A DNA stretch of 64,000 bases, taken from positions 124,001 to 188,000 of the IMG/VR virus record IMGVR_UViG_3300035212_003113; one strand, written 5' to 3'. The translations under genes and the position numbers were made by a program. Of this stretch, positions 6,947 through 64,000 are shown in pieces. Under the pieces are notes generated by a model, which saw only the letters and a list, made by a program, of their open reading frames with translations, did no database searches and was not told the origin of the DNA. Each line of letters starts with the position of its first letter. The first letter of the stretch is position 1.

Positions 6947-6954
6947 GGTTTAAT

Positions 6955-14638: not shown

Positions 14639-15051
14639 TGATCCGCAGGATCAATGAGGAACTAGCAGCGGGCAAACTTCTGCCCGTTGTTTTTCCATTT
14701 CCACCATCAAAAATACCAGTTGATGACGCACTAAACGTACGAGCAGATGCAGAGCATGTTCTATACAGCTCCTTAGTCTGGCTAGTAGACGAATCCGCTT
14801 GGGGCATTTTTGAGTTCGATCAAACGATACATGATGCGCTAACTGGCTACGCTTTCCGTAACGGTGGCATGCAGAAGCTAGAATGTCTTCTTAGTAGATA
14901 CCCAGATGGAAGTCTGCGTATAAATGCTGGAAGAATCTTATCTCCTGCTATTGACATTATCGGACCTGATGTTTATAATGAAATGCGTGGGCGCGCAGGA
15001 CGCCTCAAAGATCGCTACCTGAAGTTTGAAAAGTATACCTTCATGGTATAA
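14635..15051 (+). CDS. hypothetical protein
   Basis: ATGA-coupled 138-aa ORF. Confidence 0.6.
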   Translation: MMIRRINEELAAGKLLPVVFPFPPSKIPVDDALNVRADAEHVLYSSLVWLVDESAWGIFEFDQTIHDALTGYAFRNGGMQKLECLLSRYPDGSLRINAGRILSPAIDIIGPDVYNEMRGRAGRLKDRYLKFEKYTFMV

Positions 15052-15061
15052 TGGAGAAAAA

Positions 15062-16774
15062 ATGAAAGCACGTGATATTGTATTCGGCAAAGAGGCGCAG
15101 GACAAGATTACTCGCGGCCTCGAAAAGACTGCGAAAGCCGTACAGAGCACCCTCGGGCCACGCGGCCGCAACGTACTGATTCAGACGCCCTCTGGTTACC
15201 AGTTCACGAAGGATGGGATTACAGTCGCCAAGAACGTAGAGTTTAAGGATGCGTTTGAAAACATGGGCGCCCAGCTTGCTCGTGAAGCCGGCAATCGCTC
15301 GGTTCGTGCTGCAGGTGACGGTACCTCTTCTACGATCACCCTTCTCAATGCTATTGTGCAGGAAGGCAAACGTCAGATCAGCCTCGGTACCGATCCCATG
15401 AGCCTTCGCCGTGGCATTGACGCTGCGTGTACGCGTATTGTTAAGTGGGTCGAGGATCAAGCGGTACCAGTAAAGGGCATGGAAGATCTACTTCGCGTTG
15501 CCACTATCTCTGCAAACGGAGATGGCGAAATCGGCCGAATTATCGCAGATACGCTTGACAAGGTTGGTACTGATGCCACCGTCACCCTGGAAGAGGGCAA
15601 GGGAAATGTCACGAAAGTTACTCTGACAAAGGGCTTTGAGTTTGACCGTGGCATGGTCACCGAGCATTTCATGCGCGATTTTGAAAAGCAGCGCACGGTT
15701 TACGGTGACTCGGTTGACGACAGCATTCTCGCTCAGACGGACGCGCGTTTTTCAAACGCAGAAGACCCGCGCAGTGCGTATGTATGGCTCATCAACGGTC
15801 GCCTGGGCAGCCTTGCACAGGCCGAGGTCCGGGAGTCTTTCACCGCAATCCTGAATATGATTCACCAGACAAACGTTCCATTGCTTATTGTTGCTGAGGC
15901 TGTCGAGGGTGATGCCCTTAAGCTGCTTGCGCAGAATGCCATGCGCGGTATTCTTAATGTCGTAGCCGTACGAGCGCCTGGATTTGGCCAGGATCGCCGC
16001 GATCTAATGGAAGATCTTGCTACGGCCACTGGCGCAAAGGTTCGTCGTACCGATGCTGGTGACTCGCTCTTTGAGGATTTTTCTCTGGCAGAGCTCGGGA
16101 CTGCGCGCTTTGTGCAGGTTGGTCTGGACAAGACGATCATCATTCCACCTGATGAGCAGGCCGAGTCAATCGAGCGCCGTGTCTCAGAAATTGATGCAAA
16201 GATTGCCGTAACCACCGAAGATGATTTCCGCCACACTCTCACCCGCCGGCGCTCAATGCTTACGGGCGGCGTAGCGAATATCATTGTAGGCGGTCGCAGC
16301 GACGCCGAGGTGCGCGAGAAGCGCGATCTGTATGAGGATGCGCTGCTGGCTGCTCGTGCTGCTGCTCAGTCTGGCATCGTTCCTGGCGCGGGCACAATGC
16401 TCACTCGCGCCTCGGACATGCTAGCTGATTTCAGCACTGGCAACGAAGAGCAGAACGTAGGCGTTCATATTCTAAAGAAGGCCCTGCTTGTTCCATTCCA
16501 GGAGATCATCAAGAATGGCGGTGGCAGTGCAGAGGTAGTGCTTCATAATGTTCGCACGTCAACGGATCGTCATGCGGGCTATGATAGTAATCGTAACGAG
16601 TATTGCAATCTTCTAGAGCGCGGCATTATCGACCCCGCCCGTGTGATTGTAAGCGAAGTAGAGCATGCATGTAGCATGGCCGGCCTACTGCTGAGCACTG
16701 ATGTTGTCATTGGATTTGCGGATGAGCCTGATCTGATCAGAGCGCTGTCCGCAGCAAAACAGCAAAACGCTTGA
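15062..16774 (+). CDS. groEL: group I chaperonin (GroEL-like)
   Basis: TLGPRGRNV, TKDGITVAK, AGDGTSS, FDRG, APGFG, GIVPGAG, GIIDP. Confidence 0.95.
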   Translation: MKARDIVFGKEAQDKITRGLEKTAKAVQSTLGPRGRNVLIQTPSGYQFTKDGITVAKNVEFKDAFENMGAQLAREAGNRSVRAAGDGTSSTITLLNAIVQEGKRQISLGTDPMSLRRGIDAACTRIVKWVEDQAVPVKGMEDLLRVATISANGDGEIGRIIADTLDKVGTDATVTLEEGKGNVTKVTLTKGFEFDRGMVTEHFMRDFEKQRTVYGDSVDDSILAQTDARFSNAEDPRSAYVWLINGRLGSLAQAEVRESFTAILNMIHQTNVPLLIVAEAVEGDALKLLAQNAMRGILNVVAVRAPGFGQDRRDLMEDLATATGAKVRRTDAGDSLFEDFSLAELGTARFVQVGLDKTIIIPPDEQAESIERRVSEIDAKIAVTTEDDFRHTLTRRRSMLTGGVANIIVGGRSDAEVREKRDLYEDALLAARAAAQSGIVPGAGTMLTRASDMLADFSTGNEEQNVGVHILKKALLVPFQEIIKNGGGSAEVVLHNVRTSTDRHAGYDSNRNEYCNLLERGIIDPARVIVSEVEHACSMAGLLLSTDVVIGFADEPDLIRALSAAKQQNA

Positions 16775-32216: not shown

Positions 32217-32401
32217 ATGCTCCTCAGCGCCAGGGGATCCAGCCCAATACAATGCACGGAGAACCATAGTTATTAAATGCGGGTGGTCCGCGAGCATTAA
32301 TTATATTTGCGTCAGATCGCAAACAAGCCGCGACCGCCGGCTGCAACTGAAGGCAACTAATTGAATAACAGTCTTTCTGATCTTTTCACATGGAGCAAAT
32401 A

Positions 32402-48158: not shown

Positions 48159-48669
48159 GCGAGCAGCGGAATCAGCATTCGCTCTACTCTCCGCAAGGCG
48201 TCAGCTACAGGCAGGCAGTGGAAAGTTTACGCACAAATGCAGCTGTCCTCATCCTGCCCATAAAGGTGGCAGCGAGAAGACGGCTAGTTTTTACTTTAGC
48301 CGTGACACAGGGCAATTCTTCTGCTTTGGCTGCAACATATATGGCAACGCTTTTGATCTAATCTCTTTGCTGGGAGGCAGCAGCGACAATGCTCTTGATG
48401 CCGCAATGCAACAGGGACCTATTGCGATACCAGAGACGCCAAACATTCAAAAGCTAATTGGCGATCACAGCAGAAAACTAGTCAAGAAGTGTAGAAGTAA
48501 GCTGGCGGCCGCGGTGGGCGGATCAACCTGGGAAGCAGACTTTAAGTGGATGCAGGACTTCTATTGTAAGCTCGACAAGATACTTCCAGAGCTAGAGGAC
48601 GAATCGGCAGAGCAGATTCATGGACGGTTTCTCCAGTTCAACATGGAGCTAAACAGGAGATTTAAGTGA
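48097..48669 (+). CDS. stand-alone primase-type CHC2 zinc-binding domain protein
   Basis: CPHPAH...EKTASF...FFCFGC...GNAFDL; no TOPRIM domain; start uncertain. Confidence 0.8.
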   Translation: MQNGRVKFQQSNHQLKSLLSERAAESAFALLSARRQLQAGSGKFTHKCSCPHPAHKGGSEKTASFYFSRDTGQFFCFGCNIYGNAFDLISLLGGSSDNALDAAMQQGPIAIPETPNIQKLIGDHSRKLVKKCRSKLAAAVGGSTWEADFKWMQDFYCKLDKILPELEDESAEQIHGRFLQFNMELNRRFK

Positions 48670-53176: not shown

Positions 53177-53947
53177 TTGACTCTAAAAGTTTCAGTAAGC
53201 AGCTTAGATACGTACGAGAGCTGCCCTCGTAAATACAAATTTCAGCAAATCGACAGGCTTCCGAGGAAAAGCTGGGAGCATCTGGACGTCGGCAACTACG
53301 TCCACGAGGTGCTAGAGCATTTTCACAAAGAGCTGAATGCGGATGCCAGTCAGCAGCCAGAGGCACTACTGAAGCGCCTTGCGAAGTCCACTTGGGAGAA
53401 GTTTGAGAAAAAGATCTCCGTAGAGGGCCAGGAGAAGAGCAAGGGACTGCTGAAGTCTTATTTGGCGCATATAAATAGCACAGGCTGGCCCACGGTCCTC
53501 GCCACAGAGGATCGATTTAGTATACAGATTAACGAGAATCTGCTGATTCGTGGTGTAGTTGATCGCATCGATAGGGACGGGGATAATTATATAATCTTAG
53601 ATTACAAAACGGGCCAGTCGAAGTACCTCGACAAATTCCAGCTCCAGGTCTACGGCATGCACCTCAAGAACATGGTTCCTGACCTCAAAGAATACGAAGG
53701 CGTATACCTAGTCTTGCCGGAAGGTCCTAAAAAACTTAGTTATAAGATTACTCTAGATGATGTCGAGGAGGCCAAGGCGGACATTATTAAGACCGCAGAG
53801 CAGATCGCAAGCGACCGTACCTGGGCACCAAAGCCAACGTTTCTCTGCAAATACTGTGACTATATTGATGCTTGCCCAGACGCTTGGGGCAAGTCTAAGT
53901 CGAGTGAGGCAGATCTAGTTAAGATTTCAGGCAGAAAGAAGTTTTGA
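53177..53947 (+). CDS. PD-(D/E)XK nuclease (RecB/AddB/Cas4-like)
   Basis: SVSSLDTYESCPRKY, GNYVHEVLE, RGVVDRID, LDYKTG, QLQVY, CKYCDYIDAC. Confidence 0.92.
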   Translation: MTLKVSVSSLDTYESCPRKYKFQQIDRLPRKSWEHLDVGNYVHEVLEHFHKELNADASQQPEALLKRLAKSTWEKFEKKISVEGQEKSKGLLKSYLAHINSTGWPTVLATEDRFSIQINENLLIRGVVDRIDRDGDNYIILDYKTGQSKYLDKFQLQVYGMHLKNMVPDLKEYEGVYLVLPEGPKKLSYKITLDDVEEAKADIIKTAEQIASDRTWAPKPTFLCKYCDYIDACPDAWGKSKSSEADLVKISGRKKF

Positions 53948-53956: not shown

Positions 53957-54745
53957 ATGAACATTGACGGCACATACAAAGTAGGCAATAACAAGTATAT
54001 CTACCTAAACAGCCGAACAGGCGAGGGCTTTAGCAAGCTGATCGGCCTAATGCGAGGCTTCCTTAATTACCAGCTATCTATAATGGAGTTTCCGAGCTTT
54101 GGGCGGGACGATCTTGAGCAGGAGATGCTGGCACTGGCCATGGAGGCCCTGCCGCGGTACGACGAGAGTAAGCCTGCGAATTTGCTCACCTTTCTACAGA
54201 ACCACGTGAAAAATCGTCTGATCAATATGTGTAAGTTCTACAGTGAGAAGCGGCGCTGTGCTACCCACGTGGACAGCGGCATGCAGAAGGTTCGTTGTAA
54301 TTCGTGCCGCACGTTCTTCAGGGCTCGGAACGAAGTAGAGACCCTGTCCTGTGCAAAGTGCGGCGAGTCAGCTGCTCGAAATAGTGGGATGTGGAAGTTT
54401 TATAATCTGATTGCCATTCCTGGCCAGATTCCGGTTAATGACAGTGACGTACCAATTGAGCAGGAAATCGACCCAGACCTGTCGCAATTTACCGCAATAG
54501 GATGCGCTGGCGGCCCGATTACAGTGGATCATAACATTGATATTTCACGGCTTTTGGACAAGGAAGACGAAGTAAATAAATCAATAATCAATCTAGTTTG
54601 TCAGGGATACAGCCGGGCAGAGATCGCGATTAGACTTAATTTGAGTTCTTCAATTGTAAGTAAAAATCTGACGGATGTCTGCAACAGGCTAAGAAATAGG
54701 ATAACAGAGGATGGTAATGAATTTTCAGCTCTTCAAGACGGCTAA
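53957..54745 (+). CDS. sigma-70-family-like factor with internal zinc ribbon
   Basis: RDDLEQE...ALPRYD...TFL...VKNRL (region 2); CNSC...CAKC; GYSRAEIAIRLNLS (region 4 HTH). Confidence 0.8.
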   Translation: MNIDGTYKVGNNKYIYLNSRTGEGFSKLIGLMRGFLNYQLSIMEFPSFGRDDLEQEMLALAMEALPRYDESKPANLLTFLQNHVKNRLINMCKFYSEKRRCATHVDSGMQKVRCNSCRTFFRARNEVETLSCAKCGESAARNSGMWKFYNLIAIPGQIPVNDSDVPIEQEIDPDLSQFTAIGCAGGPITVDHNIDISRLLDKEDEVNKSIINLVCQGYSRAEIAIRLNLSSSIVSKNLTDVCNRLRNRITEDGNEFSALQDG

Positions 54746-57700
54746 GCTACAGAACGAGATCACCCTTCCCCGGACCGACTTCCTTGTAGAGGTATTGCGG
54801 AGCATCATTGCTCCGCTTTACCTTATGAATGACAAGGCTCATCCGGAGCTTAATGGCATTGCCGAAGCACTGGCCTCTTATTACGAAGAGAGTCAGCCAG
54901 GAGAACTGGTGTTCAGGAGCACGCGTTCGCGTGATCCATATGAGCTGTTCAATCCCAAACTATTGAATCTAAAGCTATCGGATGTCCGCGGCATTGCCTC
55001 CAAGGTCTCTAATAGCTCTATTGAGTTGACAGACAAAAGCATTATCAGTCTGATAGATCTCGTAATGCACGAGACGATCTACATTTGCTGGCTAGAGTTT
55101 TGTGCAATGCATCCCGGTCTTAGCTTTTTCGCTGGAGCCGAGGGCCTTTCTCCGGCAGAGCTGATTAAGACAGCCGTTGAGCAGGTAGAGGCGGGAGAAG
55201 AGGATGGAGAAAGCGAACAGCCAGCAGGCAAGGACAGGAATACGGGCAGGCGTATAAAAAGGAACAATGAAGTTCTAAAGACTAACCTTGGTCCTTCTTA
55301 TGATCAAGTTCGTAGAGCCAAGGCGGCATTGGCGTATCGCGCTGCATTCAATGGCTATACCCATAAAGGCTGGATGGACCTTATGCCATCGCACCAAGTG
55401 CAGACCCCCAAAGGCCTAAAGACCAAGGTGATAAGCACTGCTACCAGAGATGCGTTAAAAAATAAAAGCTTTAACATGATGGTGTTTTGGGCAGATAGCT
55501 CGGACCACGTCTCAAACGTAATGGCCAATATAGCCGAAAGGCTTGATCGCGGCGAGCGTCCGAACGTAGATGGCATGCCGCTGACTCGCAATCCTGTTGC
55601 ATCAAACGCAATTTACACAAATCCTGATTACTACTATACTGCTGGACAGAGCAAGGTCAGCCCCGCTGCCATCTATTCTGCATTCAACCTCGGGCACTCG
55701 GAGACAGTTGCCACACAGGCCGCAAACATGGGCCTGCTTAAGCACAAGCTTCTCTTTGGAGAAGAGGGTGACAGAGAGACGTTAATCTCTGGTTATGCAC
55801 AGTCTGCAATCGGCGCTCACAAGCGCATCCGCTCGGCATTCGGCAAGAATCCGGAACTCCTAAAGGATAAGCTGTCCTCTGTTCTAGTTGACGGCTTTAA
55901 TTTTCATGTCGAGCTGATGAAGAGCAATGGCGTGAATTCTCTTGAGTACCTGAATATCTTCAAGGCTCTGTCCAATAGTTCGTTTAAATCTTTTGCGGAT
56001 AGATTTCTCGCTCGCATAGTGGCGTCTTTGCGCACAGACTATGCATCGCTCCAACAGGCAAGCCAAGACTCATTCAACATTGTAGAAAAGCATATCTTAG
56101 AGTCCAAGACAGAGTTTGAGGGGCTTGCATCAGAGCTCCGGCACATGATGATTAGCGACGAAGACATGGCCAAGATCAATTCCGGCATGGGGTACTCTGA
56201 CTTCTTGCACTTCTTTGCGGAGATTGAGCTGAATCTGCCGAGCTATCTCCACTCCAAGTTTTCACAAGAAAACGTAAATAGCTTTTTTGCACCAGTTCCT
56301 GTTCTCAATACAGAGGCCTCTATAAAGCTCGGAGATAAAGAAATTAGGGCTAGCAACATGGTAGAGTCCTTCTTGGGCACCGCCAAAGAGAAGCAGAATC
56401 CCGATGAGCTAAAGTTTGAAAGTGCGGTCGCGCAGGCACTGAAAACACTTTCTTCGAAAAAAGTTAAGATGTCGCAAGATTCCATCAGTCTAATCCGCTC
56501 TGCATTAGAGTCGGTTTCTAAGCCGAACAGGCTCATGATGCCAGATGTTGATTTCGAAAGCGCCATCAAAGATCTTCAGACGCTGCAGAATGCGATCAAG
56601 CAGGGCGTAGAATTGGCTCCAGAGCAGGTAGACGCGATGCTAAAGGGCTTGCAGGTCCGCAATATCTATAGCAAAGAGTCGGCCCCAGAAGATATTCGCG
56701 AGGTATCTGCCAAGGCCGCAGCTGCCGTTGCAGATCACGGGTACAAGGATACGCTGTTCAATGTGTTTTCTCACTCTACGGTCGCATTGAGAAATCTATA
56801 CGTACAGACAAAGCAGCTCTCGATACTGCTCGCCAGCAAAAGAAAAAACAAAGAGCAGACGAGTGCTGCTCAAAAGCAGTGGAGAGAGGCTCCTAGTGGA
56901 AGCAGGGACCAGGGCATTGCATTCAAGATGCGAAATCTCTTAGAGACAGAAGGAAAAGACATAGATGCGCAGATCTCTGCTGCGCGTAAGTCGGTTTCAG
57001 TAAGACTGGAGCAGCTACTGCGAGGCGCCAAGGAAGACGAAAAGTCTTCTGCTTTGGCCGGAACAGGCCTGAAAAAAACTTCTGAGAAGGTCGTGGGAGA
57101 AATAAGGCTTGCTCTTGCCGAGGGCAAAACTTACAAAAAGCTTGATCGTGATGCAATGCTCAGTATTGTCAACGCTTATGACATGTCTGAGTCAGGTAGA
57201 CTTAATATTGAGGCGAGCCTGTTAGAGGGGATGCTCACCGCGCACGCTACCGCTGGGACACCGCTGTCTGCAGATGGCAAAATTCTAACTACTGCAGATC
57301 TAAGCAATGCTTGCCGCGCATTGGTGCAAAACAAGCAGACTGAGGCCGACTATGACACAATATCTGCATTTCTAGCGTCGTCATTCAGTGACGACTTTAA
57401 CCCAGATTTGCCTACGCAAACGTACTCGGACTTCTTTGGAGCTCAAAAGGAGTACCGAGGAACTCTTTCTGTTCTAAAGCCTGACTCAAATGAGCCAGAT
57501 GAAGAGGCAGATCCTATCTTGCACCTAGGCGTAGGTAGCGTGCCGTTTACTGTCGATACGGTACTTGAGAAGTTTATCGGAGATGTCTCTGGCCATGCCC
57601 TAAACAACCAACTTTTAACAAATGCCGTCTCTAGCCAGTTTTCTGCAAACAAGGAGAGGATTGAAAAAGAGATCGAAGAGAACTTTGAAGTAGATAGTGA

Positions 57701-60700
57701 CTCGGGCCTTACCAAGGGCACAAGAGACGACTTAAATGAAAAAATAAGACAGCTTGATTCGTCGTCAATATTGGGGCAGCACGGCCTCGATCTTGAGCCA
57801 CAAGCCGATGAAATTGCGAAATGGGGAACTGGGCCAGATGCTCGAGCCTCAGAGATAAAGTTCCGTATTGCGGCACTGGGCAGATTTCTTGGCAAGCGAA
57901 CGCGCTCCTCTGTAATAGCTGTCCTTGAAAAGACAATCAATCCTGGTATTAAGACAAAGAAGAAAGATGGCTCAGAGGAGGATTCGTATTTTGATGAGTC
58001 TTATTACGACCCCCTCTTGACTCTAGTCTCCAGAGAGATGAGACTTGCTCTTGAGACAGAGATCCAGGACGCAGTAGTTGCGCGCTATAAGCGTGGCAAA
58101 TTTAGAGAAACCACTAGCCTCGAACAGGCAGAGGGCGGAGCTGCCCGGGTCGATGAGTCCGAGGGGGACATCTCGGAGAAGAAAAAGAAGACCGTGAAAG
58201 AGGATGCTGGAGAATCTGTTGTCAGAGGAGAGGATATAAAGCAGTACGTATCTCGTTGGATTCAGTACCCTAATTACGGTGTCCGCGGAGGTCTGACTTC
58301 CTACTCAATGGCAGGAGTGATTGCTGATGCGCTCGAGAAGCGTGACTCTGGAGATGCCGGCCCTTTTTCCAATGCCATATCTTCTGGTTCTAAGCTTTCC
58401 TCTGATACGGTCAAGCTAAACAGCCTTCCGCAATTCGTAAGAGTTCTAAAGAATATGGCCAAGCTCGCCACTGGTTATCAGCTGTTCTATGTTCCAGCTG
58501 CCAAGAATCTTTCCCAGATTCTTGCGATCAGCAAGAAGAGTGGAGGTCTTTCTAGCCATCGCGAGATTGCTATTGACATAGGCGTTTATTGCGATCCGCT
58601 GACTGCAGCCAAGAACCTTGCCCGTGGAGCTAAGATCGGTGACACATTCAAGGAGGCCTTTGATCGCTTACTTATCAAGGTCGGAGACGAAAAGACAGAT
58701 AGCTATGAAGAGTGGCGAAATGCCGTCATAGAAGTGTCAAATTACTCTGTTGGCTCAAGGAGAAAGGCGGTATCAGGCTTGCACCAGCTTTCTACCGAGG
58801 ACAAGGATTTTCTAGATTCTCTTTTGGACAGAAAGTACGAACCAAGCCTATCATGGGGAGGAGACATGTACTCTGACTCAGAGAGGACGAGGTTGCGTGT
58901 GATCGGAAAAATTCTCCTGGAGCCTCGCCAGATTCCATGGTTAAAAGAATTCGTACAAGTTACCAAGGATCCGCAGCTGCTAGATGCCATGAAAAAGCGC
59001 TTTCCCAAAAAAGCAGAGGTCCTTGGAAAAGAGTTGGAAGACCTAGAGAAAAGCGTCGAGATGCGCAAAGCGTTCGCGTACGAGGCAAATGCCGCCCGCG
59101 ACCAGGAACCCGCATCTACCGGCACAGATCTTGTGAAGATTTTTCTTTCTGCCTATGCAAAACTAAATCATATTGATGCAGAAAAGAAGAAAACCTATAG
59201 AGCAGCTGTGTCCAAGGTGTCATCCGAAGTAAGGCCGAATGATCTAGTGCTGGCAATTTCTCGAGACACGAAATGCCAGGCGGCGACGGACTCTATGCTA
59301 GATAATTTACTCGAAAGCGGCGGAAAGCTAATCAACTCTGCTCTTGCGGGCGTTGCCGGCTACAAAGATATGGAGAGCGCAAAGGCAGACCCGTCTTTCA
59401 AGATAAAACTGCGCGAAGGCTTTTTGCAAAAACTATCTAAAGACCCATACTTTATCATTTCCTTTAAGGCTGGGCTAGAAGATCTATTTGGAGATGATTT
59501 CGATGACGCTGGCGAAGCCAAAGCGATATCCGCTGCGCTCAGCACGACAGGAGAGGTAGTACAGGATAACCGCGAAGTGGTAACGGGCGCACTTCTTGCC
59601 GCAGTGGGCGAGACGTGGAGGATTGTTCTCGGGGTTGCCTCCAAGGATGACGCATCGCGCGCAGCTGTCGACTCGCACGAATCGACCGCGCTTGCCGCCG
59701 TCGAGGGCTTTGCCAGAGTGCAGGGCGATCACCTGTCCAAGTATTCTGACGGGGTTTCGGTAAGAGATGCGATCCGCAGTGCCTGCGGAGCTAATGCAAA
59801 CCTAAATAAATTCATTGGCATGGTTGCCATGAAATACACAGGCGAAACGTTGCTCGGTGGGGAGAAGATTGAAGCGACGCGAACAATGATGAGTGATATG
59901 GCTTCTCTGTTCACTCCGAACTCAGAGCAGGTAAAGAAGTTTATAGAGACTGGCGACACCGCGCCAACTGCTTCTAAGACAATAAGAAGAAATGCGCCTG
60001 CTGCTCCGCCACAGCCAGTTGTTCGTCCGCCAGGTTTTTATGAAAATCTTTGCGAGGATGCTCAGTCTGTAGTTACGCAAGTCCTCGATTACTTTAATGC
60101 ATCTGAGGCTGTCCGTGACCGCGTTTTTGAGGCCAAGCAAGCAGCATCACGCGCCACTGCAAACTCGCAGGATAATCAGATCCGCCAGTTGTTTGAAGAG
60201 ATTAGCGTGGCAACAATGCCTGTGGCTGGTGCCCTGTCTCAGTATAAAACCGCATATCAGCTACATGCTAAGCATATACTTGAAAGGGCGAATGAGCTTA
60301 CTGGCATAATGAAGCAGGCATATCCCGATATTCACAATGTCCTTGACGAGATCTCTGCCAAAGGTATGGATCTTGCTCGAATCACTGACGAAGATCTTAA
60401 GAACTTGATTGCTGGAGATATGGCAAAAAATGCTCCAGAGGTCAAAGCATTTGTCTCTGCAGTGTCGACCGAGGGGGTTGACGCAGTCGTAGCGGCTACG
60501 CGTCGACAGGTCTACAGTGGAGTTGTGCCAAAAGGCAAGAAGATCGTAAGCCCTGCAGAAAGGGACAGGGCAAATATCACTCTGGACAAAATCTCTGCAG
60601 AGATAAAAAAATATCTTGATGTCAACGGACTAAACCTACTTGGCGACGAGGTGCTTAACAGCAGGATCTTGAGAGCTATCGGAATGGACGTTCTTAATGT

Positions 60701-62807
60701 ATTTAGAAACGGCAAGGTTGTCTTTGCCGAAGCAAGCAAAATCCTTGTCTCGCTTGGCGACTCCGCACCGATTACCCAAGAGGAGCTGGACCAGCGCCTG
60801 CGCTCCATGGTGCAAGACGCCATGGCGGACAAGGCGGCCGTCATAACCCGTTATATTTCCGGTAGCACCCAAAGCTTTGAAGACGTAGAAGAAGCAATGG
60901 AGTACGAGAGGACCGGGGCGACCGATCAGGATGAGCTGGAGGCAAGATTTAAGCTTGTTCGCCGCCATGGCCCAGGTATTCTTGAAAAGAAAAAGATCAT
61001 AACTGAGCGCGTGGTTTTCGCTTCCGATCTTTCAAAGAAAGCAGAGACGCAGTCGAGCCGCATTTCTCCCGAATTCCAATCAGAATTCCAAAAGGCTCAG
61101 GAGAAGATTAATGCGGGACGAAATATTGCTCAAGAGATAATTGAAAGTGCTCAGGGGGCAACAGACAGTGTTGACGAAGAGGTCACCATCTCCGAAGCCG
61201 AAGAGGCGCAAAAAGAAGACGTCCGCCGAAAGATCTCGGCTTATCTTGCCGCTCGCGCCGCTTCTGCACAAGGTGTTGCCAAGAAGATGATCGAGCTACT
61301 CCAGACAGAGGTAGACTCGGCACTTGGTGACGAAGAGGTCTTTGCATTCGTCTCTTTGCCAGGACTCAATACCATGTTGCGTTCACTACAGGGAGTAGAG
61401 AGCATCAGGCCGAATGAACTAGAGAGATCCGCTCGCTCACGCATAGAGCTCGTACTATCGAAAGTGAACGAGGCTTTTGAGGGAAGATTCCGCATTGTCT
61501 TGGACTACGGCAAAAAGGCTTCAGACTTTGATCTAAAGTTAGATGAAAAGCTTTTGGCAATAGTTCGTAAAGTAGATGCTCTAGCGAAGAATGTCGACCC
61601 AGACTCGGCCTCAGGGATCGGTCTATATAATATTCGACTTGCAGCGAGCAGCATACTCGCAGAAAAGAGAACCGTTCGCGATGACGCCAATATCTCCAGT
61701 GTCATCTCCTCTTTAAATGATCTTGATAGTCTGATTGCCATTGATCGCGCTGATCGCGCAAATCCGCGCACTGTCTCAAGTATAATGAGCAGAGTGTCTA
61801 ACCTTGGCGTATCAAGTGCAGATCGCACTGTGATATACAAAGAAGTTCCAGATGGCGCAGGAAGTCAGCAGGCAGTCGCAGACTTTGACAAGGAACTGGC
61901 CAAGATTGATGATTTTGTAAAAGCCAGCGAGGGATTCGGCCTAGAGCCAGAGCTAAAGGCAGTCGTCACACGACTAGGCGAAATGGCAAGTCTCTTGTCT
62001 CCTGGTCGCAGAAAGATAGATACCGGCGCCAACATGGACGGAGCCCTTTCTGCAATAAGAGAGCTTAATAGAGCACTGATCAGAGGCACTAAGCTAGAGA
62101 GAGCACAGCTGGATATGTTCCTTGATAGCATGCATCGCTTTGGCATAAAGACGGACGAGTTTGGCGCCGAGGTTATCGAGGTCACAGAGGATGTCGAGAC
62201 CGCGCCGCTAGAGGCCACAGGTCCTACTGCAGAGGTCCAGGTCGAAGCACCGACAGAAGAGGACGTTTTGGAAATTAGTGAGGATGACGTAACTTCCCTA
62301 GAGCCCCCCGCCGCAGAGTCAGGAAAAATGGCGCCTGATGAGGAGGAGCCGGTTGAAATCTCACAAGAGGATATTCAGCCGATTGAAGAGCCAGCCGCAG
62401 AAGCCCCTCCGGCCCCTGTTGCCCCGGCCTATGACCTGACCGAGGCACATGATGCCTTGCACCAGGTCGCAGAAGGTACTTCGTCTGCTGCCAAGGCCGC
62501 CGGCGCAGTTGGCGATACCGCCAACAAGCTCTCGACCCTGGTCAGCCGGCTCAGTGCAATGCTGCCCCCAACTGTGGACGTAGCTGCACTGCCCGCCAAG
62601 TTGCATGCTGCAACTGAAACGGCCAAGGCGGTGCAGGCCCTGGTGTCCTCGTCTGTCCGCTCGCCCACATGGACGGCAGGTTCTGAGTTGCCGCACATGC
62701 CCGAGTTGGACAAACTGATCTCCGAAGTAGATCAGATTATGTCGCCAACACGGCGGGCATCTAGGTCTCTCCGCTTCGTAAGAACAGGAGACTCCTGGTT
62801 GATCTGA
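54717..62807 (+). CDS. giant hypothetical protein (~2,700 aa), possibly virion-internal
   Basis: Uninterrupted ORF, charged and helical, acidic Pro-rich region near C-terminus; no catalytic motif recognised. Confidence 0.8.
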   Translation: MNFQLFKTAKLQNEITLPRTDFLVEVLRSIIAPLYLMNDKAHPELNGIAEALASYYEESQPGELVFRSTRSRDPYELFNPKLLNLKLSDVRGIASKVSNSSIELTDKSIISLIDLVMHETIYICWLEFCAMHPGLSFFAGAEGLSPAELIKTAVEQVEAGEEDGESEQPAGKDRNTGRRIKRNNEVLKTNLGPSYDQVRRAKAALAYRAAFNGYTHKGWMDLMPSHQVQTPKGLKTKVISTATRDALKNKSFNMMVFWADSSDHVSNVMANIAERLDRGERPNVDGMPLTRNPVASNAIYTNPDYYYTAGQSKVSPAAIYSAFNLGHSETVATQAANMGLLKHKLLFGEEGDRETLISGYAQSAIGAHKRIRSAFGKNPELLKDKLSSVLVDGFNFHVELMKSNGVNSLEYLNIFKALSNSSFKSFADRFLARIVASLRTDYASLQQASQDSFNIVEKHILESKTEFEGLASELRHMMISDEDMAKINSGMGYSDFLHFFAEIELNLPSYLHSKFSQENVNSFFAPVPVLNTEASIKLGDKEIRASNMVESFLGTAKEKQNPDELKFESAVAQALKTLSSKKVKMSQDSISLIRSALESVSKPNRLMMPDVDFESAIKDLQTLQNAIKQGVELAPEQVDAMLKGLQVRNIYSKESAPEDIREVSAKAAAAVADHGYKDTLFNVFSHSTVALRNLYVQTKQLSILLASKRKNKEQTSAAQKQWREAPSGSRDQGIAFKMRNLLETEGKDIDAQISAARKSVSVRLEQLLRGAKEDEKSSALAGTGLKKTSEKVVGEIRLALAEGKTYKKLDRDAMLSIVNAYDMSESGRLNIEASLLEGMLTAHATAGTPLSADGKILTTADLSNACRALVQNKQTEADYDTISAFLASSFSDDFNPDLPTQTYSDFFGAQKEYRGTLSVLKPDSNEPDEEADPILHLGVGSVPFTVDTVLEKFIGDVSGHALNNQLLTNAVSSQFSANKERIEKEIEENFEVDSDSGLTKGTRDDLNEKIRQLDSSSILGQHGLDLEPQADEIAKWGTGPDARASEIKFRIAALGRFLGKRTRSSVIAVLEKTINPGIKTKKKDGSEEDSYFDESYYDPLLTLVSREMRLALETEIQDAVVARYKRGKFRETTSLEQAEGGAARVDESEGDISEKKKKTVKEDAGESVVRGEDIKQYVSRWIQYPNYGVRGGLTSYSMAGVIADALEKRDSGDAGPFSNAISSGSKLSSDTVKLNSLPQFVRVLKNMAKLATGYQLFYVPAAKNLSQILAISKKSGGLSSHREIAIDIGVYCDPLTAAKNLARGAKIGDTFKEAFDRLLIKVGDEKTDSYEEWRNAVIEVSNYSVGSRRKAVSGLHQLSTEDKDFLDSLLDRKYEPSLSWGGDMYSDSERTRLRVIGKILLEPRQIPWLKEFVQVTKDPQLLDAMKKRFPKKAEVLGKELEDLEKSVEMRKAFAYEANAARDQEPASTGTDLVKIFLSAYAKLNHIDAEKKKTYRAAVSKVSSEVRPNDLVLAISRDTKCQAATDSMLDNLLESGGKLINSALAGVAGYKDMESAKADPSFKIKLREGFLQKLSKDPYFIISFKAGLEDLFGDDFDDAGEAKAISAALSTTGEVVQDNREVVTGALLAAVGETWRIVLGVASKDDASRAAVDSHESTALAAVEGFARVQGDHLSKYSDGVSVRDAIRSACGANANLNKFIGMVAMKYTGETLLGGEKIEATRTMMSDMASLFTPNSEQVKKFIETGDTAPTASKTIRRNAPAAPPQPVVRPPGFYENLCEDAQSVVTQVLDYFNASEAVRDRVFEAKQAASRATANSQDNQIRQLFEEISVATMPVAGALSQYKTAYQLHAKHILERANELTGIMKQAYPDIHNVLDEISAKGMDLARITDEDLKNLIAGDMAKNAPEVKAFVSAVSTEGVDAVVAATRRQVYSGVVPKGKKIVSPAERDRANITLDKISAEIKKYLDVNGLNLLGDEVLNSRILRAIGMDVLNVFRNGKVVFAEASKILVSLGDSAPITQEELDQRLRSMVQDAMADKAAVITRYISGSTQSFEDVEEAMEYERTGATDQDELEARFKLVRRHGPGILEKKKIITERVVFASDLSKKAETQSSRISPEFQSEFQKAQEKINAGRNIAQEIIESAQGATDSVDEEVTISEAEEAQKEDVRRKISAYLAARAASAQGVAKKMIELLQTEVDSALGDEEVFAFVSLPGLNTMLRSLQGVESIRPNELERSARSRIELVLSKVNEAFEGRFRIVLDYGKKASDFDLKLDEKLLAIVRKVDALAKNVDPDSASGIGLYNIRLAASSILAEKRTVRDDANISSVISSLNDLDSLIAIDRADRANPRTVSSIMSRVSNLGVSSADRTVIYKEVPDGAGSQQAVADFDKELAKIDDFVKASEGFGLEPELKAVVTRLGEMASLLSPGRRKIDTGANMDGALSAIRELNRALIRGTKLERAQLDMFLDSMHRFGIKTDEFGAEVIEVTEDVETAPLEATGPTAEVQVEAPTEEDVLEISEDDVTSLEPPAAESGKMAPDEEEPVEISQEDIQPIEEPAAEAPPAPVAPAYDLTEAHDALHQVAEGTSSAAKAAGAVGDTANKLSTLVSRLSAMLPPTVDVAALPAKLHAATETAKAVQALVSSSVRSPTWTAGSELPHMPELDKLISEVDQIMSPTRRASRSLRFVRTGDSWLI

Positions 62808-62809
62808 AG

Positions 62810-62838
62810 AAAAGCCCGGCCCCAAGCCGGGCTTTTTT
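62810..62838 (+). terminator. intrinsic terminator
   Basis: aaaagcccggc-cccaa-gccgggc plus T6. Confidence 0.88.
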
Positions 62839-62873: not shown

Positions 62874-64000
62874 ATGAACACACCAACCACAAAGCTAGTC
62901 GAAAAAGACGGCAACTTTATAGTGTCAATTACTGTTCCAACCCGTGATGTCGAGGACGCACTAAATTCTGCCGCCTCGGCAATCATGCCTTCGGCCGAAG
63001 TGCCCGGGTTCCGCCCAGGGCACACGCCACTGCCAGTAATTCGTCAGCATTACTCTACGCAGCTAAAGACGCAGGTGTCGGCCAAGCTAGTGCAGGAGGC
63101 AACTCGCACTGCTCTAAAGCAGCTAAGCATCTCGGCCGGCGCCCGTCCTACGTTAGATGGCGACTGTCGTCCGCGCGGCATTCGCAAGTGGCTCGGCAAG
63201 TTCGATATCAATGGTTCATTTTCTTTTTCGGTTGTGACTCCGGTCCCACCAAGAGTAGAGGCGGTCTGTGTCGACGGACTCAACATCGACACTAATGCGG
63301 ACGACTCCTCTCGTGCCGTAGACGAGCAGCTGCACCACCTGCGTCATGACTTTGTCATCAAGACAGTTTCAGAACTGCCATCCGCCGACGGTGACGAGGT
63401 CGTTTGCTCGATTACCGCTACAGATAGCAACGGACAGGAGATCCCAGACTTACGCCTGACAAGCTTTCCACTTTCCATGGATTTGCAAGCCAGCAACATG
63501 CTTAGCAAGACAATGGCACAGCACCTTCTTGGCAAGCGCCCCGGAGATATCGCAGAATTCTCCGAAGACGGCACCACGTACCGCATGGCTGTGGAAAGCG
63601 TCAGCAACCAGCAGCTGCCCCCCCTTGATGACGAATTTGCGGTCAAGTGTGGTTTCACGTCGCTTGCAGATCTGCGCCAACAGGTACTTAATGAGTGGTT
63701 TCTGAAAAATGCCGGCAGGGTTCGACGAGCGCTACATCTGCAGGTTCGCGAGCAGCTTGTAAAGAACAATCCTTTTGAAGTTCCCTCGGAGTGGCTCGCA
63801 GATTACGACAACAAAGTCCGCGGTCTTGCTCAAAATGACGAAACACTCCAGGGAGCAGATGCAGCGGAGTTCGCAAGGGTTTACGCAGCATCAGACTACC
63901 TACTAGAGCTTCTAGAGGATCAGTTCCCGGCAGAGACTACAATTTCAGATGTAGATTTGATTCAGTACGCAAAAGAAGAGCTGGCAACTGCTGCCGTCAA
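62874..64000 (+). CDS. tig: trigger factor (partial, runs off right edge; absent from ORF track)
   Basis: Manual translation: MNTPTTK...EVPGFRPGHTPLPVIRQHY (GFRxGxxP), VDEQLHHLR, DGDEV, LPPLDDEFAVKCGFTSLADLRQ. Confidence 0.88.
   Translation, partial: MNTPTTKLVEKDGNFIVSITVPTRDVEDALNSAASAIMPSAEVPGFRPGHTPLPVIRQHYSTQLKTQVSAKLVQEATRTALKQLSISAGARPTLDGDCRPRGIRKWLGKFDINGSFSFSVVTPVPPRVEAVCVDGLNIDTNADDSSRAVDEQLHHLRHDFVIKTVSELPSADGDEVVCSITATDSNGQEIPDLRLTSFPLSMDLQASNMLSKTMAQHLLGKRPGDIAEFSEDGTTYRMAVESVSNQQLPPLDDEFAVKCGFTSLADLRQQVLNEWFLKNAGRVRRALHLQVREQLVKNNPFEVPSEWLADYDNKVRGLAQNDETLQGADAAEFARVYAASDYLLELLEDQFPAETTISDVDLIQYAKEELATAAV

What the first reader, a model, noticed from the sequence alone, without database searches (positions are those of the whole stretch)
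62874..64000. Hidden trigger factor with intact ribosome-docking loop but eroded PPIase domain
Missed by the ORF track because it leaves the window. GFRPGHTP fits the L23-binding signature and LPPLDDEFA...SLADLR marks the C-domain. The middle region lacks the usual FKBP hallmark (IPGFE-type; here NMLSKTMAQHLLGKRPGD). Trigger factor is rarely reported from phages. Inference: it may displace host TF from the exit tunnel or act as a holdase.
Basis: partly seen in the sequence, partly recalled or inferred. Interest (0 to 1): 0.7.

Follow-up and report, generated by a model that had tools for sequence, protein, structure and literature searches.

The report
Phage-encoded trigger factor, PPIase-dead variant
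A 372-kb freshwater phage carries an intact copy of the bacterial ribosome-docking chaperone trigger factor that keeps its ribosome-binding loop but has lost its prolyl-isomerase pocket, and it belongs to a previously undescribed, phage-specific branch of that chaperone family.

Summary
The frame at window 62874 runs past the window and ends 112 bases later, giving an intact 412-aa protein. Four other public lake metagenome runs assembled this stretch without any difference.

It is a three-domain trigger factor (TF):
- Trigger_N scores 70 bits, and TIGR00115 aligns end to end at 138 bits.
- The AF2 model has pLDDT 94 and matches solved TFs at VIA Z 17-18.
- The GFRxGxxP docking loop is intact.
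- The head keeps an FKBP fold (Z about 10), but pocket residues are replaced and 13 residues, Y221 among them, are deleted.

The gene is not a stray host gene. It belongs to one clade of 42 representative TFs that share an 11-residue basic/aromatic insertion in the N domain. Of 13 members whose surroundings were read, nine lie just upstream of two small ORFs and a DnaE polymerase; all 13 lie among phage-like genes, none beside clpP-clpX. Basal members still have a canonical PPIase.

The same genome also holds a second TF paralog with a degenerate docking loop, plus Lon, a GroEL-like chaperonin and DnaJ.

My best reading is a ribosome-docked, isomerase-dead holdase for phage nascent chains. Ribosome binding is untested. 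I class it as a new variant of a known kind.

The parts
62874..64000 (+). Trigger factor gene TF-A, codons 1-375 of 412. The ORF continues 112 bases beyond the window to genome position 188112.
   Evidence: ORF listing and its continuation in L001. Trigger_N 70 bits. TIGR00115 138 bits, end to end. AF2 pLDDT 94. TF structures at Foldseek E 1e-15 to 1e-19 and VIA Z 17-18.
62874..63242 (+). N-terminal (tail) domain, aa 1-123. In characterised TFs this is the ribosome-binding domain.
   Evidence: Pfam Trigger_N covers aa 14-155. VIA Z 12.3 and rmsd 2.8 A to the E. coli TF N domain 1oms, over model residues 4-129.
63006..63029 (+). TF signature loop GFRPGHTP (aa 45-52), the uL23-docking motif GFRxGxxP.
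   Evidence: It aligns with E. coli G43 F44 R45 K46 G47 K48 V49 P50. G, F, R, G and P are conserved in at least 90% of 105 aligned TFs. It lies in the loop between helices 23-40 and 53-59 of the model.
63159..63203 (+). Clade-specific insertion in the N domain (aa 96-110, GDCRPRGIRKWLGKF). It is basic and aromatic. Its function is unknown.
   Evidence: This region is 19-23 residues long in the 42 phage-type TFs, against 11-15 in 62 of the 63 others (P0171 has 21). Conservation among the 42: K/R at position 104 in 38, an aromatic residue at 106 in 41, G108 in 42, F110 in 36. pLDDT is 96.
63243..63353 (+). Linker from the N domain to the head (aa 124-160), with the conserved helix EQLHHLRHD.
   Evidence: Helix 145-159 in the model. 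E151 Q152 H154 H155 L156 R157 H158 D159 are invariant in the close clade.
63354..63614 (+). Head domain (aa 161-247). It has an FKBP-like fold, but the PPIase pocket is remodelled and 13 residues of the flap region are deleted.
   Evidence: VIA Z 9-10 and rmsd 1.6-2.2 A to FKBP13, SlyD, SlpA and FKBP12 over residues 166-247. No FKBP_C hit. Against E. coli TF: F168->I, F177->I, I195->S, F198->M, Y221 and H222 deleted, F233->Y, F185 kept.
63615..64000 (+). First part of the C-terminal body/arms domain (aa 248-375 lie in the window; the domain ends at aa 412).
   Evidence: Trigger_C hit at aa 263-332, 17.5 bits, below the cut-off. The model is helical from residue 253 on, with the main helices from 264 to 409. 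Aligned to the C domains of 1w26 and 3gty within the full-length matches.
62808..62838 (+). Terminator-like hairpin with a T run, between the stop of the giant ORF (62805-62807) and the TF start.
   Evidence: Fold of -27.6 kcal/mol, z -3.05. Found by the terminator scan. A second such hairpin follows the 100-aa gene after TF, outside the window.
54711..62807 (+). Giant upstream neighbour, 2698 aa, with no Pfam or PHROG match. This slot before TF holds a large ORF in all close relatives.
   Evidence: Homologous at the N and C termini to the 2094-aa neighbour in L003 (E 4e-33). Not detectably related to the proteins in the same slot of distant relatives.
10540..12960 (+). LonA protease. It is part of the same genome's protein-quality-control gene set (context, not part of TF).
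   Evidence: Lon_C 4.8e-86, LON_substr_bdg 1.7e-49, AAA 1e-25.
15026..16774 (+). GroEL-like chaperonin (context).
   Evidence: Cpn60_TCP1 2.6e-64. 36-39% identity to GroEL genes in phage-collection records, among them Bacteroides and Flavobacterium phages.

Best explanation
The window's right end encodes an intact, virus-borne trigger factor, here called TF-A.

Shown:
- It has the three-domain TF architecture: N-terminal tail, FKBP-like head, and C-terminal body with arms.
- The uL23-docking signature loop is complete.
- The FKBP fold is kept, but the aromatic pocket is replaced and 13 residues including Y221 are gone.
- The gene is under purifying selection.
- It is a conserved gene of an uncultured huge-phage lineage, where it sits just upstream of two small ORFs and the phage DnaE.

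Inferred:
- TF-A docks through its N domain on the host ribosome's uL23. The phage has no uL23 gene of its own.
- It cradles emerging phage polypeptides as an ATP-independent holdase/foldase, without catalysing prolyl isomerisation.
- It is one arm of a phage-encoded protein-quality-control kit: a GroEL-like chaperonin, DnaJ (which would recruit host DnaK), LonA, and a second TF paralog.
- This kit would support a proteome unusually rich in very large proteins during a long infection in which host chaperones are not renewed.
- The head survives as an auxiliary client-binding module.
For: Identity:
- Trigger_N scores 70 bits.
- TIGR00115 aligns over positions 5-410 of 410, E 3e-40.
- phmmer finds solved TFs 1t11 and 1w26.
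- The AF2 model has pLDDT 94 and pTM 0.81.
- Foldseek gives 3gty, 2vrh, 1w26 and 1t11 at 1e-15 to 1e-19. VIA gives Z 17.9, 17.5 and 17.3 over 377-387 residues.

Docking loop:
- GFRPGHTP aligns with E. coli G43-P50, and each of G, F, R, G and P is at least 90% conserved in 105 TFs.
- No uL23 gene is found in the phage.

Dead PPIase on a kept fold:
- No FKBP_C hit at E<=1 genome-wide.
- The pocket substitutions and the 13-residue deletion are seen.
- The FKBP core matches at Z 9-10 and rmsd about 2 A.

Selection and age:
- Identity within the close clade is 0.52 for the N domain, 0.47 for the head and 0.56 for the C domain.
- dN is 0.14-0.52 while dS is saturated, and dN/dS is 0.06-0.30 where it can be computed.
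- The 42 phage-type TFs lie on one side of a branch, SH-aLRT 99, with the insertion columns removed.
- TF, two small ORFs and then DnaE (PHP domain) are seen for nine members, down to about 22% identity. Two more members lie on contigs too short to reach DnaE.
- Basal members pass the tig equivalog cut-off and keep the IPGFE motif and the flap.

The kit:
- LonA and the GroEL-like chaperonin, DnaJ, the second TF paralog.
- 22 ORFs of 800 aa or more.

It is a real replicating entity:
- Near-identical DNA occurs in lake and river metagenomes of several studies, 2020-2025.
Against: - Ribosome binding is inferred only from a motif. The single complex prediction, N domain with E. coli uL23, returned no verdict.
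- The host is unknown, so the match to its uL23 cannot be judged.
- The strict motif is kept in only 26 of the 42 phage-type TFs, against 62 of 63 others. Docking is therefore not a universal constraint in this family.
- In E. coli, by general knowledge, TF is in molar excess over ribosomes. If the host is similar, it is unclear what an extra copy adds.
- The gene sits in a replication/recombination module, not with translation genes.
- No expression data exist. Every sequencing run found holds DNA.
- Loss of PPIase activity is inferred from residues, not measured.
Confidence: 0.6

Rival explanations
1. TF-A is a dedicated off-ribosome assembly chaperone. It would work mainly free in the cytoplasm, holding one or a few specific phage clients until assembly. 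Candidates are the giant protein encoded just upstream, the DnaE replisome encoded just downstream, or virion parts. Thermotoga TF does something similar with ribosomal protein S7.
For: - The position is strictly conserved: a large or giant ORF, then TF, two small ORFs, then DnaE.
- In most relatives the first small ORF overlaps or abuts the TF stop codon, which suggests coupled translation.
- The best structural match includes 3gty, the TF-S7 assembly complex.
- The Hodor megaplasmid preprint also places a TF gene in a conserved gene module with giant proteins, and proposes that it chaperones them (PMC12934698).
- The docking motif is dispensable in parts of the phage family.
Against: - TF-A keeps the complete docking loop, while its paralog in the same genome has lost it. 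A purely off-ribosome protein has no need to keep the loop.
- The upstream slot is not homologous across the lineage. It holds 242 aa, 1293 aa or 2094-2698 aa proteins with no detectable similarity between the distant ones, yet TF is kept throughout.
- Neither small neighbour has a recognisable fold or family.
Confidence: 0.2
2. TF-A acts in host takeover by competition at the tunnel exit. Its main job would be to occupy uL23 and so exclude host TF, SRP or SecA, redirecting or crippling host protein biogenesis. The basic/aromatic N-domain insertion would supply extra ribosome affinity.
For: - The docking loop is intact.
- The clade-specific, highly conserved basic/aromatic insertion in the ribosome-binding domain is well ordered in the model.
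Against: - No data on affinity or competition exist.
- I could not read where the insertion lies relative to the ribosome face, because model coordinates are not exposed.
- The whole C-terminal client-binding cradle and the head are conserved under purifying selection. A mere plug would not need them.
- The co-occurrence with GroEL, DnaJ and Lon points to folding support rather than sabotage.
Confidence: 0.12
3. TF-A is a decaying host-derived passenger gene with no present function, and the lost PPIase is the first stage of its erosion.
For: - It scores below the tig equivalog cut-off (138 against 180 bits).
- The Trigger_C hit is below the Pfam cut-off.
- The head evolves about twice as fast as the N and C domains.
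Against: - The frame is intact here and in every relative, down to about 22% identity, at the same genomic position.
- dN is far below the saturated dS.
- 82 columns are invariant across a clade that spans 38-81% identity to the window's protein, and many lie in the head.
- The model is confident in all three domains.
Confidence: 0.03
4. The gene is bacterial DNA misassembled into, or misfiled as, a virus record.
For: The one TF hit in deposited 'phage' records that I inspected is exactly this kind of error: a tig-clpP-clpX bacterial contig filed as phage. The other hits in those records have 35% identity or less.
Against: - The gene is flanked on both sides by phage-lineage genes on a 371,675-bp record with 127-bp terminal repeats.
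- The same junctions occur in other assemblies and in relatives.
- There is no clpP-clpX beside it.
- Phage features elsewhere in the record: tail-fibre-like proteins with a Peptidase_S74 domain, a weak sheath-like domain, PhoH and ribonucleotide reductase, and five tRNAs.
Confidence: 0.01

Closest known systems
Bacterial trigger factor, Tig (E. coli b0436; PDB 1w26, 2vrh; TIGR00115)
   Same: - Same three-domain order and fold (VIA Z 17.9 over 387 residues).
- Same GFRxGxxP loop at the same place.
- End-to-end profile alignment.
- It is therefore expected to work alike, as a ribosome-docked, ATP-independent cradle for nascent chains.
   Different: - Only 19% identical and below the equivalog cut-off.
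- PPIase pocket changes: F168I, F177I, I195S, F198M, Y221 and H222 deleted within a 13-residue deletion.
- An 11-residue basic/aromatic insertion in the N domain.
- Shortened arm region and C terminus.
- Encoded by a phage beside DnaE, not in a tig-clpP-clpX-lon cluster.
Thermotoga maritima trigger factor (PDB 3gty, 3gu0)
   Same: It is the best Foldseek match (E 9e-19; VIA Z 17.5). The entry title names both folding and assembly activities, which fits a holdase reading.
   Different: It is a cellular protein with 17-18% identity, and it lacks the N-domain insertion.
Phage-type trigger factors with a canonical head (representatives P0148, P0127, P0153, P0126, P0244; metagenomic, unnamed)
   Same: - Same clade (SH-aLRT 99).
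- Same N-domain insertion, full-length or shorter.
- For P0127 and P0148, the two whose contigs were read, the same TF, two small ORFs and PHP/DnaE order.
   Different: - They keep the [IV]PGF[ED] motif and the full 30-residue flap.
- P0127 and P0148 pass the tig cut-off at 272 and 308 bits. Their precomputed Pfam records include FKBP_C.
- The window's subclade has lost these features.
Second paralog TF-B in the same genome (genome 93421-94743; representative P0125)
   Same: - 26% identical over the full length (E 3e-49).
- Same insertion.
- Its representative P0125 lies in the same phage-type clade, next to the window's subclade.
   Different: - The docking loop is degenerate (PPHPKGSVP), while the long flap segment is kept.
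- It sits at a different conserved locus, beside a Peptidase_M41-like gene and DHH, NUDIX and AAA_3 genes.
Chloroplast Tig2, a truncated trigger factor (PMC11731035)
   Same: It is a precedent for a TF lineage that sheds canonical domains or activities while keeping the ribosome-binding N domain.
   Different: By that paper's abstract, Tig2 lacks the typical three-domain layout, whereas this protein keeps all three. Tig2 is eukaryotic-organellar and serves ribosome biogenesis. I read only the abstract.
Trigger factor of 'Hodor' gut megaplasmids (preprint PMC12934698)
   Same: It is a TF gene on a mobile element of more than 300 kb, in a conserved gene module with giant proteins. The authors propose that it chaperones them.
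   Different: There it sits with sortase and SecYEG genes on conjugative plasmids of Bacillota. Here it sits in the replication module of a freshwater phage, with no secretion genes nearby. Sequence relatedness was not tested.
Phage-encoded GroEL-type chaperonins
   Same: They show the same logic of a large phage bringing its own folding machinery. One is encoded in this very window.
   Different: They belong to a different family and work post-translationally with ATP. The phage chaperonin literature is cited from general knowledge, not checked here.

Membership tests
Trigger factor (Tig; TIGR00115 / Pfam Trigger_N + FKBP_C + Trigger_C) | N-terminal ribosome-binding domain (PF05697) above the curated cut-off | tested here: met
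   70.3 bits against a cut-off of 22.2, E 2.8e-19. VIA Z 12.3 and rmsd 2.8 A to 1oms.
Trigger factor (Tig; TIGR00115 / Pfam Trigger_N + FKBP_C + Trigger_C) | TF signature loop GFRxGxxP | tested here: met
   GFRPGHTP at aa 45-52, aligned to E. coli residues 43-50.
Trigger factor (Tig; TIGR00115 / Pfam Trigger_N + FKBP_C + Trigger_C) | FKBP-type PPIase domain recognisable by sequence (PF00254), with its aromatic pocket and flap | tested here: not met
   No FKBP_C hit for the protein or anywhere in the genome at E<=1. Four of the seven pocket positions compared are substituted non-conservatively (F168I, F177I, I195S, F198M), F233 becomes Y, Y221 is deleted, and F185 is kept. 13 residues are deleted.
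Trigger factor (Tig; TIGR00115 / Pfam Trigger_N + FKBP_C + Trigger_C) | Head domain with an FKBP fold, inserted between the N and C domains | tested here: met
   Residues 166-247 match FKBP13, SlyD, SlpA and FKBP12 at Z 9-10 and rmsd 1.6-2.2 A. E. coli TF PPIase domain 1l1p is found by Foldseek.
Trigger factor (Tig; TIGR00115 / Pfam Trigger_N + FKBP_C + Trigger_C) | C-terminal body/arms domain (PF05698) | tested here: inconclusive
   The Pfam hit is below the cut-off (17.5 against 22.7 bits, covering only profile positions 1-70). However, the TIGR00115 alignment and the structural alignments to 1w26 and 3gty run to the C terminus.
Trigger factor (Tig; TIGR00115 / Pfam Trigger_N + FKBP_C + Trigger_C) | Score above the NCBIfam equivalog cut-off (same function as cellular Tig) | tested here: not met
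   138.3 bits against 180.2. Basal phage-type members P0127 and P0148 do pass (272 and 308 bits).
Trigger factor (Tig; TIGR00115 / Pfam Trigger_N + FKBP_C + Trigger_C) | Binding to uL23 at the ribosomal tunnel exit | tested here: inconclusive
   The complex prediction with E. coli uL23 returned no verdict. Only the motif supports binding. A biochemical test is needed.
Trigger factor (Tig; TIGR00115 / Pfam Trigger_N + FKBP_C + Trigger_C) | Prolyl cis/trans isomerase activity | not testable with these tools
   Absence is predicted from the pocket residues. An enzyme assay is needed.
Trigger factor-related chaperone of Mycoplasma type (NF045969) | Score above the family cut-off | tested here: not met
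   19 bits against 140.
Phage-type trigger factor clade (defined here) | N-domain insertion of 19-23 residues with the [KR][KR]-aromatic-x-G-x-F motif, and placement in the clade | tested here: met
   Insertion RPRGIRKWLGKF. The protein lies in the 42-member clade, SH-aLRT 99, with the insertion columns dropped.
Phage-type trigger factor clade (defined here) | Position immediately upstream of two small conserved ORFs and the phage DnaE | tested here: met
   Seen in the window's genome and on the contigs of eight other clade members, plus IMG/VR locus L014. P0122 and P0124 lie on contigs too short to reach DnaE.

The most novel reading that the evidence does not exclude
A virus-specific trigger-factor family re-programmes the ribosomal tunnel exit.

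- After one ancient capture, huge phages evolved TFs with an extra basic/aromatic ribosome contact, the N-domain insertion.
- They repeatedly discarded prolyl isomerase activity.
- In this lineage the gene duplicated into two forms: a docking-competent, PPIase-dead form (TF-A, possibly working with the small protein encoded just after it, whose start overlaps the TF stop in most relatives) and a docking-loop-dead form (TF-B).
- Together they would give the phage its own co-translational and post-translational holdase pair, able to outcompete host TF and SRP on host ribosomes.
Probability: 0.2. Interest if true: 0.8.

Novelty: new variant of a known kind. Interest (0 to 1): 0.6.

Why it matters
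Large phages are known to carry chaperonins and translation parts. A conserved virus-borne ribosome-associated chaperone has not been described in the literature I could search.

If TF-A docks on host ribosomes, phage control of the host would reach the first moment of protein folding at the tunnel exit. That site is shared with SRP and SecA.

The family is also a natural separation-of-function series for trigger factor:
- members with a canonical PPIase;
- members with the FKBP fold but no pocket;
- members with a degenerate docking loop, found together with a docking-competent copy in one genome;
- a conserved insertion in the ribosome-binding domain.

This series could help settle what the head domain and ribosome docking each contribute to chaperone function. 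It also flags an uncultured freshwater huge-phage lineage with an unusually complete protein-quality-control kit: two TFs, a GroEL-like chaperonin, DnaJ and LonA.

Tried and rejected
- **Complex prediction.** TF-A N domain (aa 1-160) with E. coli uL23 returned no verdict (score 0.00, chains poorly folded without alignments). It counts neither for nor against binding.
- **First small neighbour, s1.** The AF2 model has pLDDT 82, but only one of five models is good. Foldseek against PDB found nothing at E<=0.001. The Atlas gave no usable hit and Pfam gave nothing.
- **Second small neighbour, s2.** It matches only 'hypothetical protein' clusters, partly viral.
- **Megaplasmid question.** I asked whether the record is a megaplasmid like the 'Hodor' elements. 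I rejected this on the tail-fibre, sheath-like, PhoH, RNR and tRNA content and on the IMG/VR classification. However, no terminase or major capsid gene was identified: Terminase_6C and Terminase_6N found nothing, and ten structural-region ORFs gave no hallmark PHROG.
- **HSP70/DnaK.** None in the genome.
- **dN/dS per domain.** dS is saturated for every pair with DNA available, and DNA of the closest relative (P0002, 81% identical) was not retrievable. Only qualitative purifying selection can be claimed.
- **Deposited phage genomes.** Hits to TF have 35% identity or less. The one record inspected is a bacterial tig-clpP-clpX contig filed as phage. DnaE has no relative above 32% identity there, so the lineage could not be named.
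- **Literature.** Seven searches on phage, viral or jumbo-phage trigger factor found no report.
- **Host.** It was not determined.
Full report
**1. The observation**

It opens at GTG 62853 or ATG 62874 and is still open at base 64000. The window is bases 124001-188000 of a 371,675-bp IMG/VR virus record with 127-bp terminal repeats and 51% G+C.

In the flanking DNA (locus L001) the frame runs on for 112 more bases to a stop at genome position 188112. There is no frameshift. The protein is 412 aa from the ATG, and homologues begin at this ATG.

Logan contigs of four other lake-water runs cover L001 at 100% identity with no indels. Two of those runs are flagged as a possible source of the record.

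**2. What it is**

By sequence:
- Pfam Trigger_N scores 70 bits (E 2.8e-19). Trigger_C is sub-threshold at 17.5 bits. There is no FKBP_C hit.
- NCBIfam TIGR00115 (tig) aligns over profile positions 5-410 of 410 at 138 bits (E 3e-40), below its equivalog cut-off of 180.
- phmmer against PDB sequences finds Vibrio and E. coli TF.

By structure:
- An AF2 model built on a 105-sequence alignment is confident throughout (mean pLDDT 94, pTM 0.81).
- Foldseek returns full-length TFs first: 3gty, 3gu0, 2vrh, 1t11, 1w26 and chloroplast TIG1, at E 1e-10 to 1e-19.
- VIA-align gives Z 17.9, 17.5 and 17.3 over 377-387 residues. The N domain matches 1oms at Z 12.3 and rmsd 2.8 A. The head (residues 166-247) matches FKBP13, SlyD, SlpA and FKBP12 at Z 9-10 and rmsd 1.6-2.2 A.

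The protein therefore has all three TF domains as folds.

**3. Docking loop and PPIase pocket**

I aligned the protein with E. coli Tig, fetched from NC_000913.3.
- The signature G43-F44-R45-x-G47-x-x-P50 is matched by G45-F46-R47-P48-G49-H50-T51-P52.
- In the head, F168 becomes I, F177 becomes I, I195 becomes S, P196 becomes K, G197 becomes T, F198 becomes M and F233 becomes Y. Only F185 is kept.
- A 13-residue segment that contains Y221 and H222 is deleted.
- FKBP_C finds nothing anywhere in the genome, even at E<=1.

The fold is kept but the catalytic pocket is not, so loss of isomerase activity is the expected consequence. This is an inference. The review PMC8185961 states three relevant points. 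The N domain binds uL23. The C domain carries the main chaperone function. [quoted passage not shown]

**4. It is a conserved gene of a phage lineage**

Close relatives:
- A word-index search found ten relatives at 37-81% identity. None of them carries an FKBP_C annotation, and nine of the ten carry Trigger_N alone. Below them there is a gap down to cellular TFs at 21-28%.
- The relatives sit on contigs of up to 173 kb.
- The gene order is the same each time: PD-(D/E)XK nuclease, a roughly 260-aa ORF, a giant ORF of 2094-2698 aa, TF, a roughly 100-aa ORF, a roughly 105-aa ORF, DnaE, and further on RuvC-like, DnaJ and RecA genes.
- The window's genome has the same downstream DnaJ and RecA.

The wider family:
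- A profile search of 1.84 billion representatives gave 31 proteins at E<=1e-30 and a graded series below that.
- The contigs of P0123, P0127, P0131, P0148 and P0149 (about 22-30% identity to the window's TF) all show TF, two small ORFs and DnaE, or its PHP domain at a contig end. P0122 and P0124 lie on short contigs that are compatible but do not reach DnaE.
- None of the contigs shows the cellular tig-clpP-clpX arrangement.

The shared insertion and the tree:
- All these proteins share an insertion in the N domain, 19-23 residues where 62 of the 63 other TFs compared have 11-15.
- Among the 42 insertion-bearing proteins, K/R occurs at position 104 in 38, an aromatic residue at 106 in 41, G108 in 42 and F110 in 36.
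- With the insertion columns removed, the 42 lie on one side of a branch with SH-aLRT 99 (quick IQ-TREE; same result).
- This fits a single capture from a cell followed by long vertical descent in phages. The root and the donor are not established.

**5. Stepwise loss of the PPIase**

- Basal phage-type members (P0126, P0127, P0148, P0153, P0244) keep the [IV]PGF[ED] motif and a 30-residue flap. P0127 and P0148 pass the tig equivalog cut-off at 272 and 308 bits.
- In a Pfam scan of the 32 best representatives, Trigger_N was found in 32, Trigger_C in 31 and FKBP_C in only 9.
- The short-flap state occurs in 17 of the 42 and needs at least three changes on the tree. The isomerase module has therefore been lost more than once.
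- The cellular sequences in these alignments were picked by similarity to the phage profile, so they are not a fair background for how often cellular TFs lose the pocket.

**6. Selection**

- Within the close clade, mean pairwise identity is 0.52 for the N domain, 0.47 for the head and 0.56 for the C domain.
- For gene pairs with DNA available, dN is 0.14-0.52 while dS is saturated. dN/dS is 0.06-0.30 where it can be computed. In the closest pair with DNA (L002 against L014), the head's dN is about twice that of the N and C domains.
- The head is relaxed but still constrained. That fits a retained binding module, not a decaying one.

**7. A second paralog, and the rest of the kit**

A scan of the genome with Trigger_N found a second gene, TF-B, at genome 93421-94743.
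- It is 440 aa and 26% identical to TF-A over the full length (E 3e-49).
- It is 64% identical to representative P0125.
- Its docking loop reads PPHPKGSVP, so the F-R pair is lost. It keeps the insertion and the long flap segment.
- P0125 and its kin lie inside the phage-type clade, next to the window's subclade. That points to a duplication within the phage lineage.
- TF-B lies at a different conserved locus: Peptidase_M41-like, two small ORFs, TF-B, a small ORF, then DHH/DHHA1, NUDIX and AAA_3 genes.

Across the phage-type family, the strict GFRxGxxP motif is kept in 26 of 42, against 62 of 63 other TFs. Its retention in TF-A is therefore informative.

The window also encodes a full-length LonA (10540-12960) and a GroEL-like chaperonin (15026-16774). 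No Hsp70 and no uL23 were found. The genome has 22 ORFs of 800 aa or more.

**8. Local gene structure**

- A strong terminator-like hairpin (62808-62838, -27.6 kcal/mol, z -3.05) separates the giant ORF from TF. Another follows the 100-aa gene downstream. Here, TF plus that small gene look like a unit.
- In most relatives the small gene's start overlaps or abuts the TF stop.
- Both small proteins are conserved across the lineage but match no known family or fold.
- The giant upstream protein is homologous only among close relatives. Distant relatives have unrelated proteins of 242 or 1293 aa in that slot.

**9. Is the record a phage, and where does it live?**

Evidence for a phage:
- IMG/VR classes it as a complete virus with terminal repeats.
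- It has four tail-fibre-like proteins of about 1100 aa, one with a Peptidase_S74 domain.
- It has a weak tail-sheath C-terminal domain (22 bits, below the cut-off).
- It has PhoH, ribonucleotide reductase and a weak PhuZ-like tubulin hit.
- It has five tRNAs.

I did not find a terminase or a major capsid gene with the few profiles I tried. This remains a gap.

Near-identical DNA occurs in lake-water and river metagenomes of several studies, 2020-2025. No RNA run holds it. The host is unknown.

**10. Mechanism**

The best-supported reading is that TF-A docks on host uL23 through its intact loop. It would shield emerging phage chains in the C-domain cradle, with the pocket-less FKBP head as an extra binding surface. 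It would act alongside phage DnaJ (with host DnaK), the GroEL-like chaperonin, Lon and the loop-less TF-B.

Shown: fold, motif, pocket loss, conservation, synteny and the paralog. Inferred: ribosome binding, holdase activity and lack of isomerase activity.

Rivals, with evidence for and against, are given in their own section:
- a dedicated off-ribosome assembly chaperone for the neighbouring giant protein or the replisome;
- competitive takeover of the tunnel exit, helped by the insertion;
- a decaying passenger gene;
- an assembly or filing artefact.

**11. Novelty**

- Seven literature searches found no report of a phage trigger factor. One viral-ecology paper states explicitly that none was found in its set (PMC8407431).
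- BFVD holds no viral protein with this fold at E<=0.001.
- Deposited phage genomes hold no relative above 35% identity. The one such record inspected is bacterial DNA filed as phage.
- JGI's automatic annotation already names some members 'trigger factor', so the bare identification is not new.
- New here are the phage-specific clade with its insertion, its fixed position beside DnaE, the repeated loss of the PPIase, and the two-paralog arrangement.
- The nearest published parallel is a TF gene in a conserved module with giant proteins on 'Hodor' megaplasmids (PMC12934698).

I rate it a new variant of a known kind, with interest 0.6.

Noticed in passing
outside the window: genome 93421-94743 (+) = L028:1477-2796: A second trigger-factor paralog (TF-B, 440 aa) lies in the same phage genome. 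Its docking loop is degenerate (PPHPKGSVP), but it keeps the clade-specific insertion and the long flap. It is 26% identical to the window's TF and 64% identical to representative P0125. It sits at a different conserved locus.
   Followed up: partly
window 10540-12960 (+) and 15026-16774 (+): The phage encodes a full-length LonA protease and a GroEL-like chaperonin. The 138-aa ORF just upstream of the chaperonin (14635-15051) has no GroES (Cpn10) or other Pfam hit.
   Followed up: partly
outside the window: genome 196226-198287 (L011:8226-10284): DnaJ (J domain, zinc-finger and C-terminal domains) is followed directly by RecA. This pair is conserved downstream of DnaE in most relatives whose contigs reach that far. 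No Hsp70 gene is present, so this DnaJ would have to use host DnaK.
   Followed up: partly
window 54711-62807 (+): A 2698-aa ORF has no Pfam or PHROG match. Its N terminus and its extreme C terminus (…RTGDSWLI) are conserved in the 2094-aa counterpart of a relative whose TF is 38% identical. Distant relatives have unrelated proteins of 242 or 1293 aa in this slot.
   Followed up: partly
window 53957-54745 (+): A 262-aa ORF just before the giant gene has a weak Sigma70_r2 hit (E 6.6e-4, below the cut-off). Its positional counterpart in L023 carries a precomputed Sigma70_r2 annotation. It may be a phage sigma-like factor conserved in this module.
   Followed up: no
just outside the window: L001:2768-3070 and L001:3107-3418 (genome 188120-188422 and 188459-188770): Two small ORFs always lie between TF and DnaE. 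The first often overlaps the TF stop and is duplicated in tandem within one protein in L022. The second has an invariant CxxC pair. Neither matches a known family or fold.
   Followed up: partly
window 18559-32297 (-): Four consecutive minus-strand ORFs of 1081-1177 aa interrupt the plus-strand gene array. One carries a Peptidase_S74 (endosialidase chaperone) domain. Window 18001-20000, at one end of the block, reaches 62% G+C against a genome mean of 51%. They are probably tail fibres.
   Followed up: no
outside the window: genome 92254-92823 (L028:310-879): A 189-aa ORF with an HEAGH motif and a weak Peptidase_M41 (FtsH protease domain) hit lies upstream of TF-B. The same neighbour is conserved beside P0125 in L029 and L030.
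   Followed up: no
outside the window: genome 317857-319203 (L009:7857-9200): A 448-aa ORF has a weak hit to the PHROG 'tubulin PhuZ' (E 3e-6). Whether this phage builds a PhuZ spindle or a nucleus-like compartment was not examined.
   Followed up: no
L002:12029-16219, L003:11893-15753, and the unfetched P0002 contig: Self-splicing or homing elements may be present in relatives' replication genes. DnaE is split into 915 + 378 aa in L002. It is 1286 aa with a faint intein hit in L003. The PD-(D/E)XK nuclease carries a LAGLIDADG_3 insertion on the P0002 contig, and only a faint LAGLIDADG_3 hit in L002.
   Followed up: no
L026 (GenBank CAKLQH020000005.1, 'Acinetobacter phage MD-2021a'): This 219-kb record filed under Caudoviricetes carries leuA, a TonB-dependent receptor and tig-clpP-clpX. 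It looks like a bacterial chromosome contig. Some short 'phage' records with TF hits (for example 1.6 and 3.7 kb) may be similar; these were not inspected.
   Followed up: partly
window 48666-51844 (+), 6928-8058 (+), 1132-2703 (+): The window is largely a replication and repair module: SbcD/SbcC-like nuclease, ATP-dependent DNA ligase, a helicase, a clamp-loader-like ATPase and a PD-(D/E)XK/Cas4-like nuclease (53177-53947). It also holds glycosyltransferases, among them an Exostosin GT47-like protein at 33488-35389.
   Followed up: no
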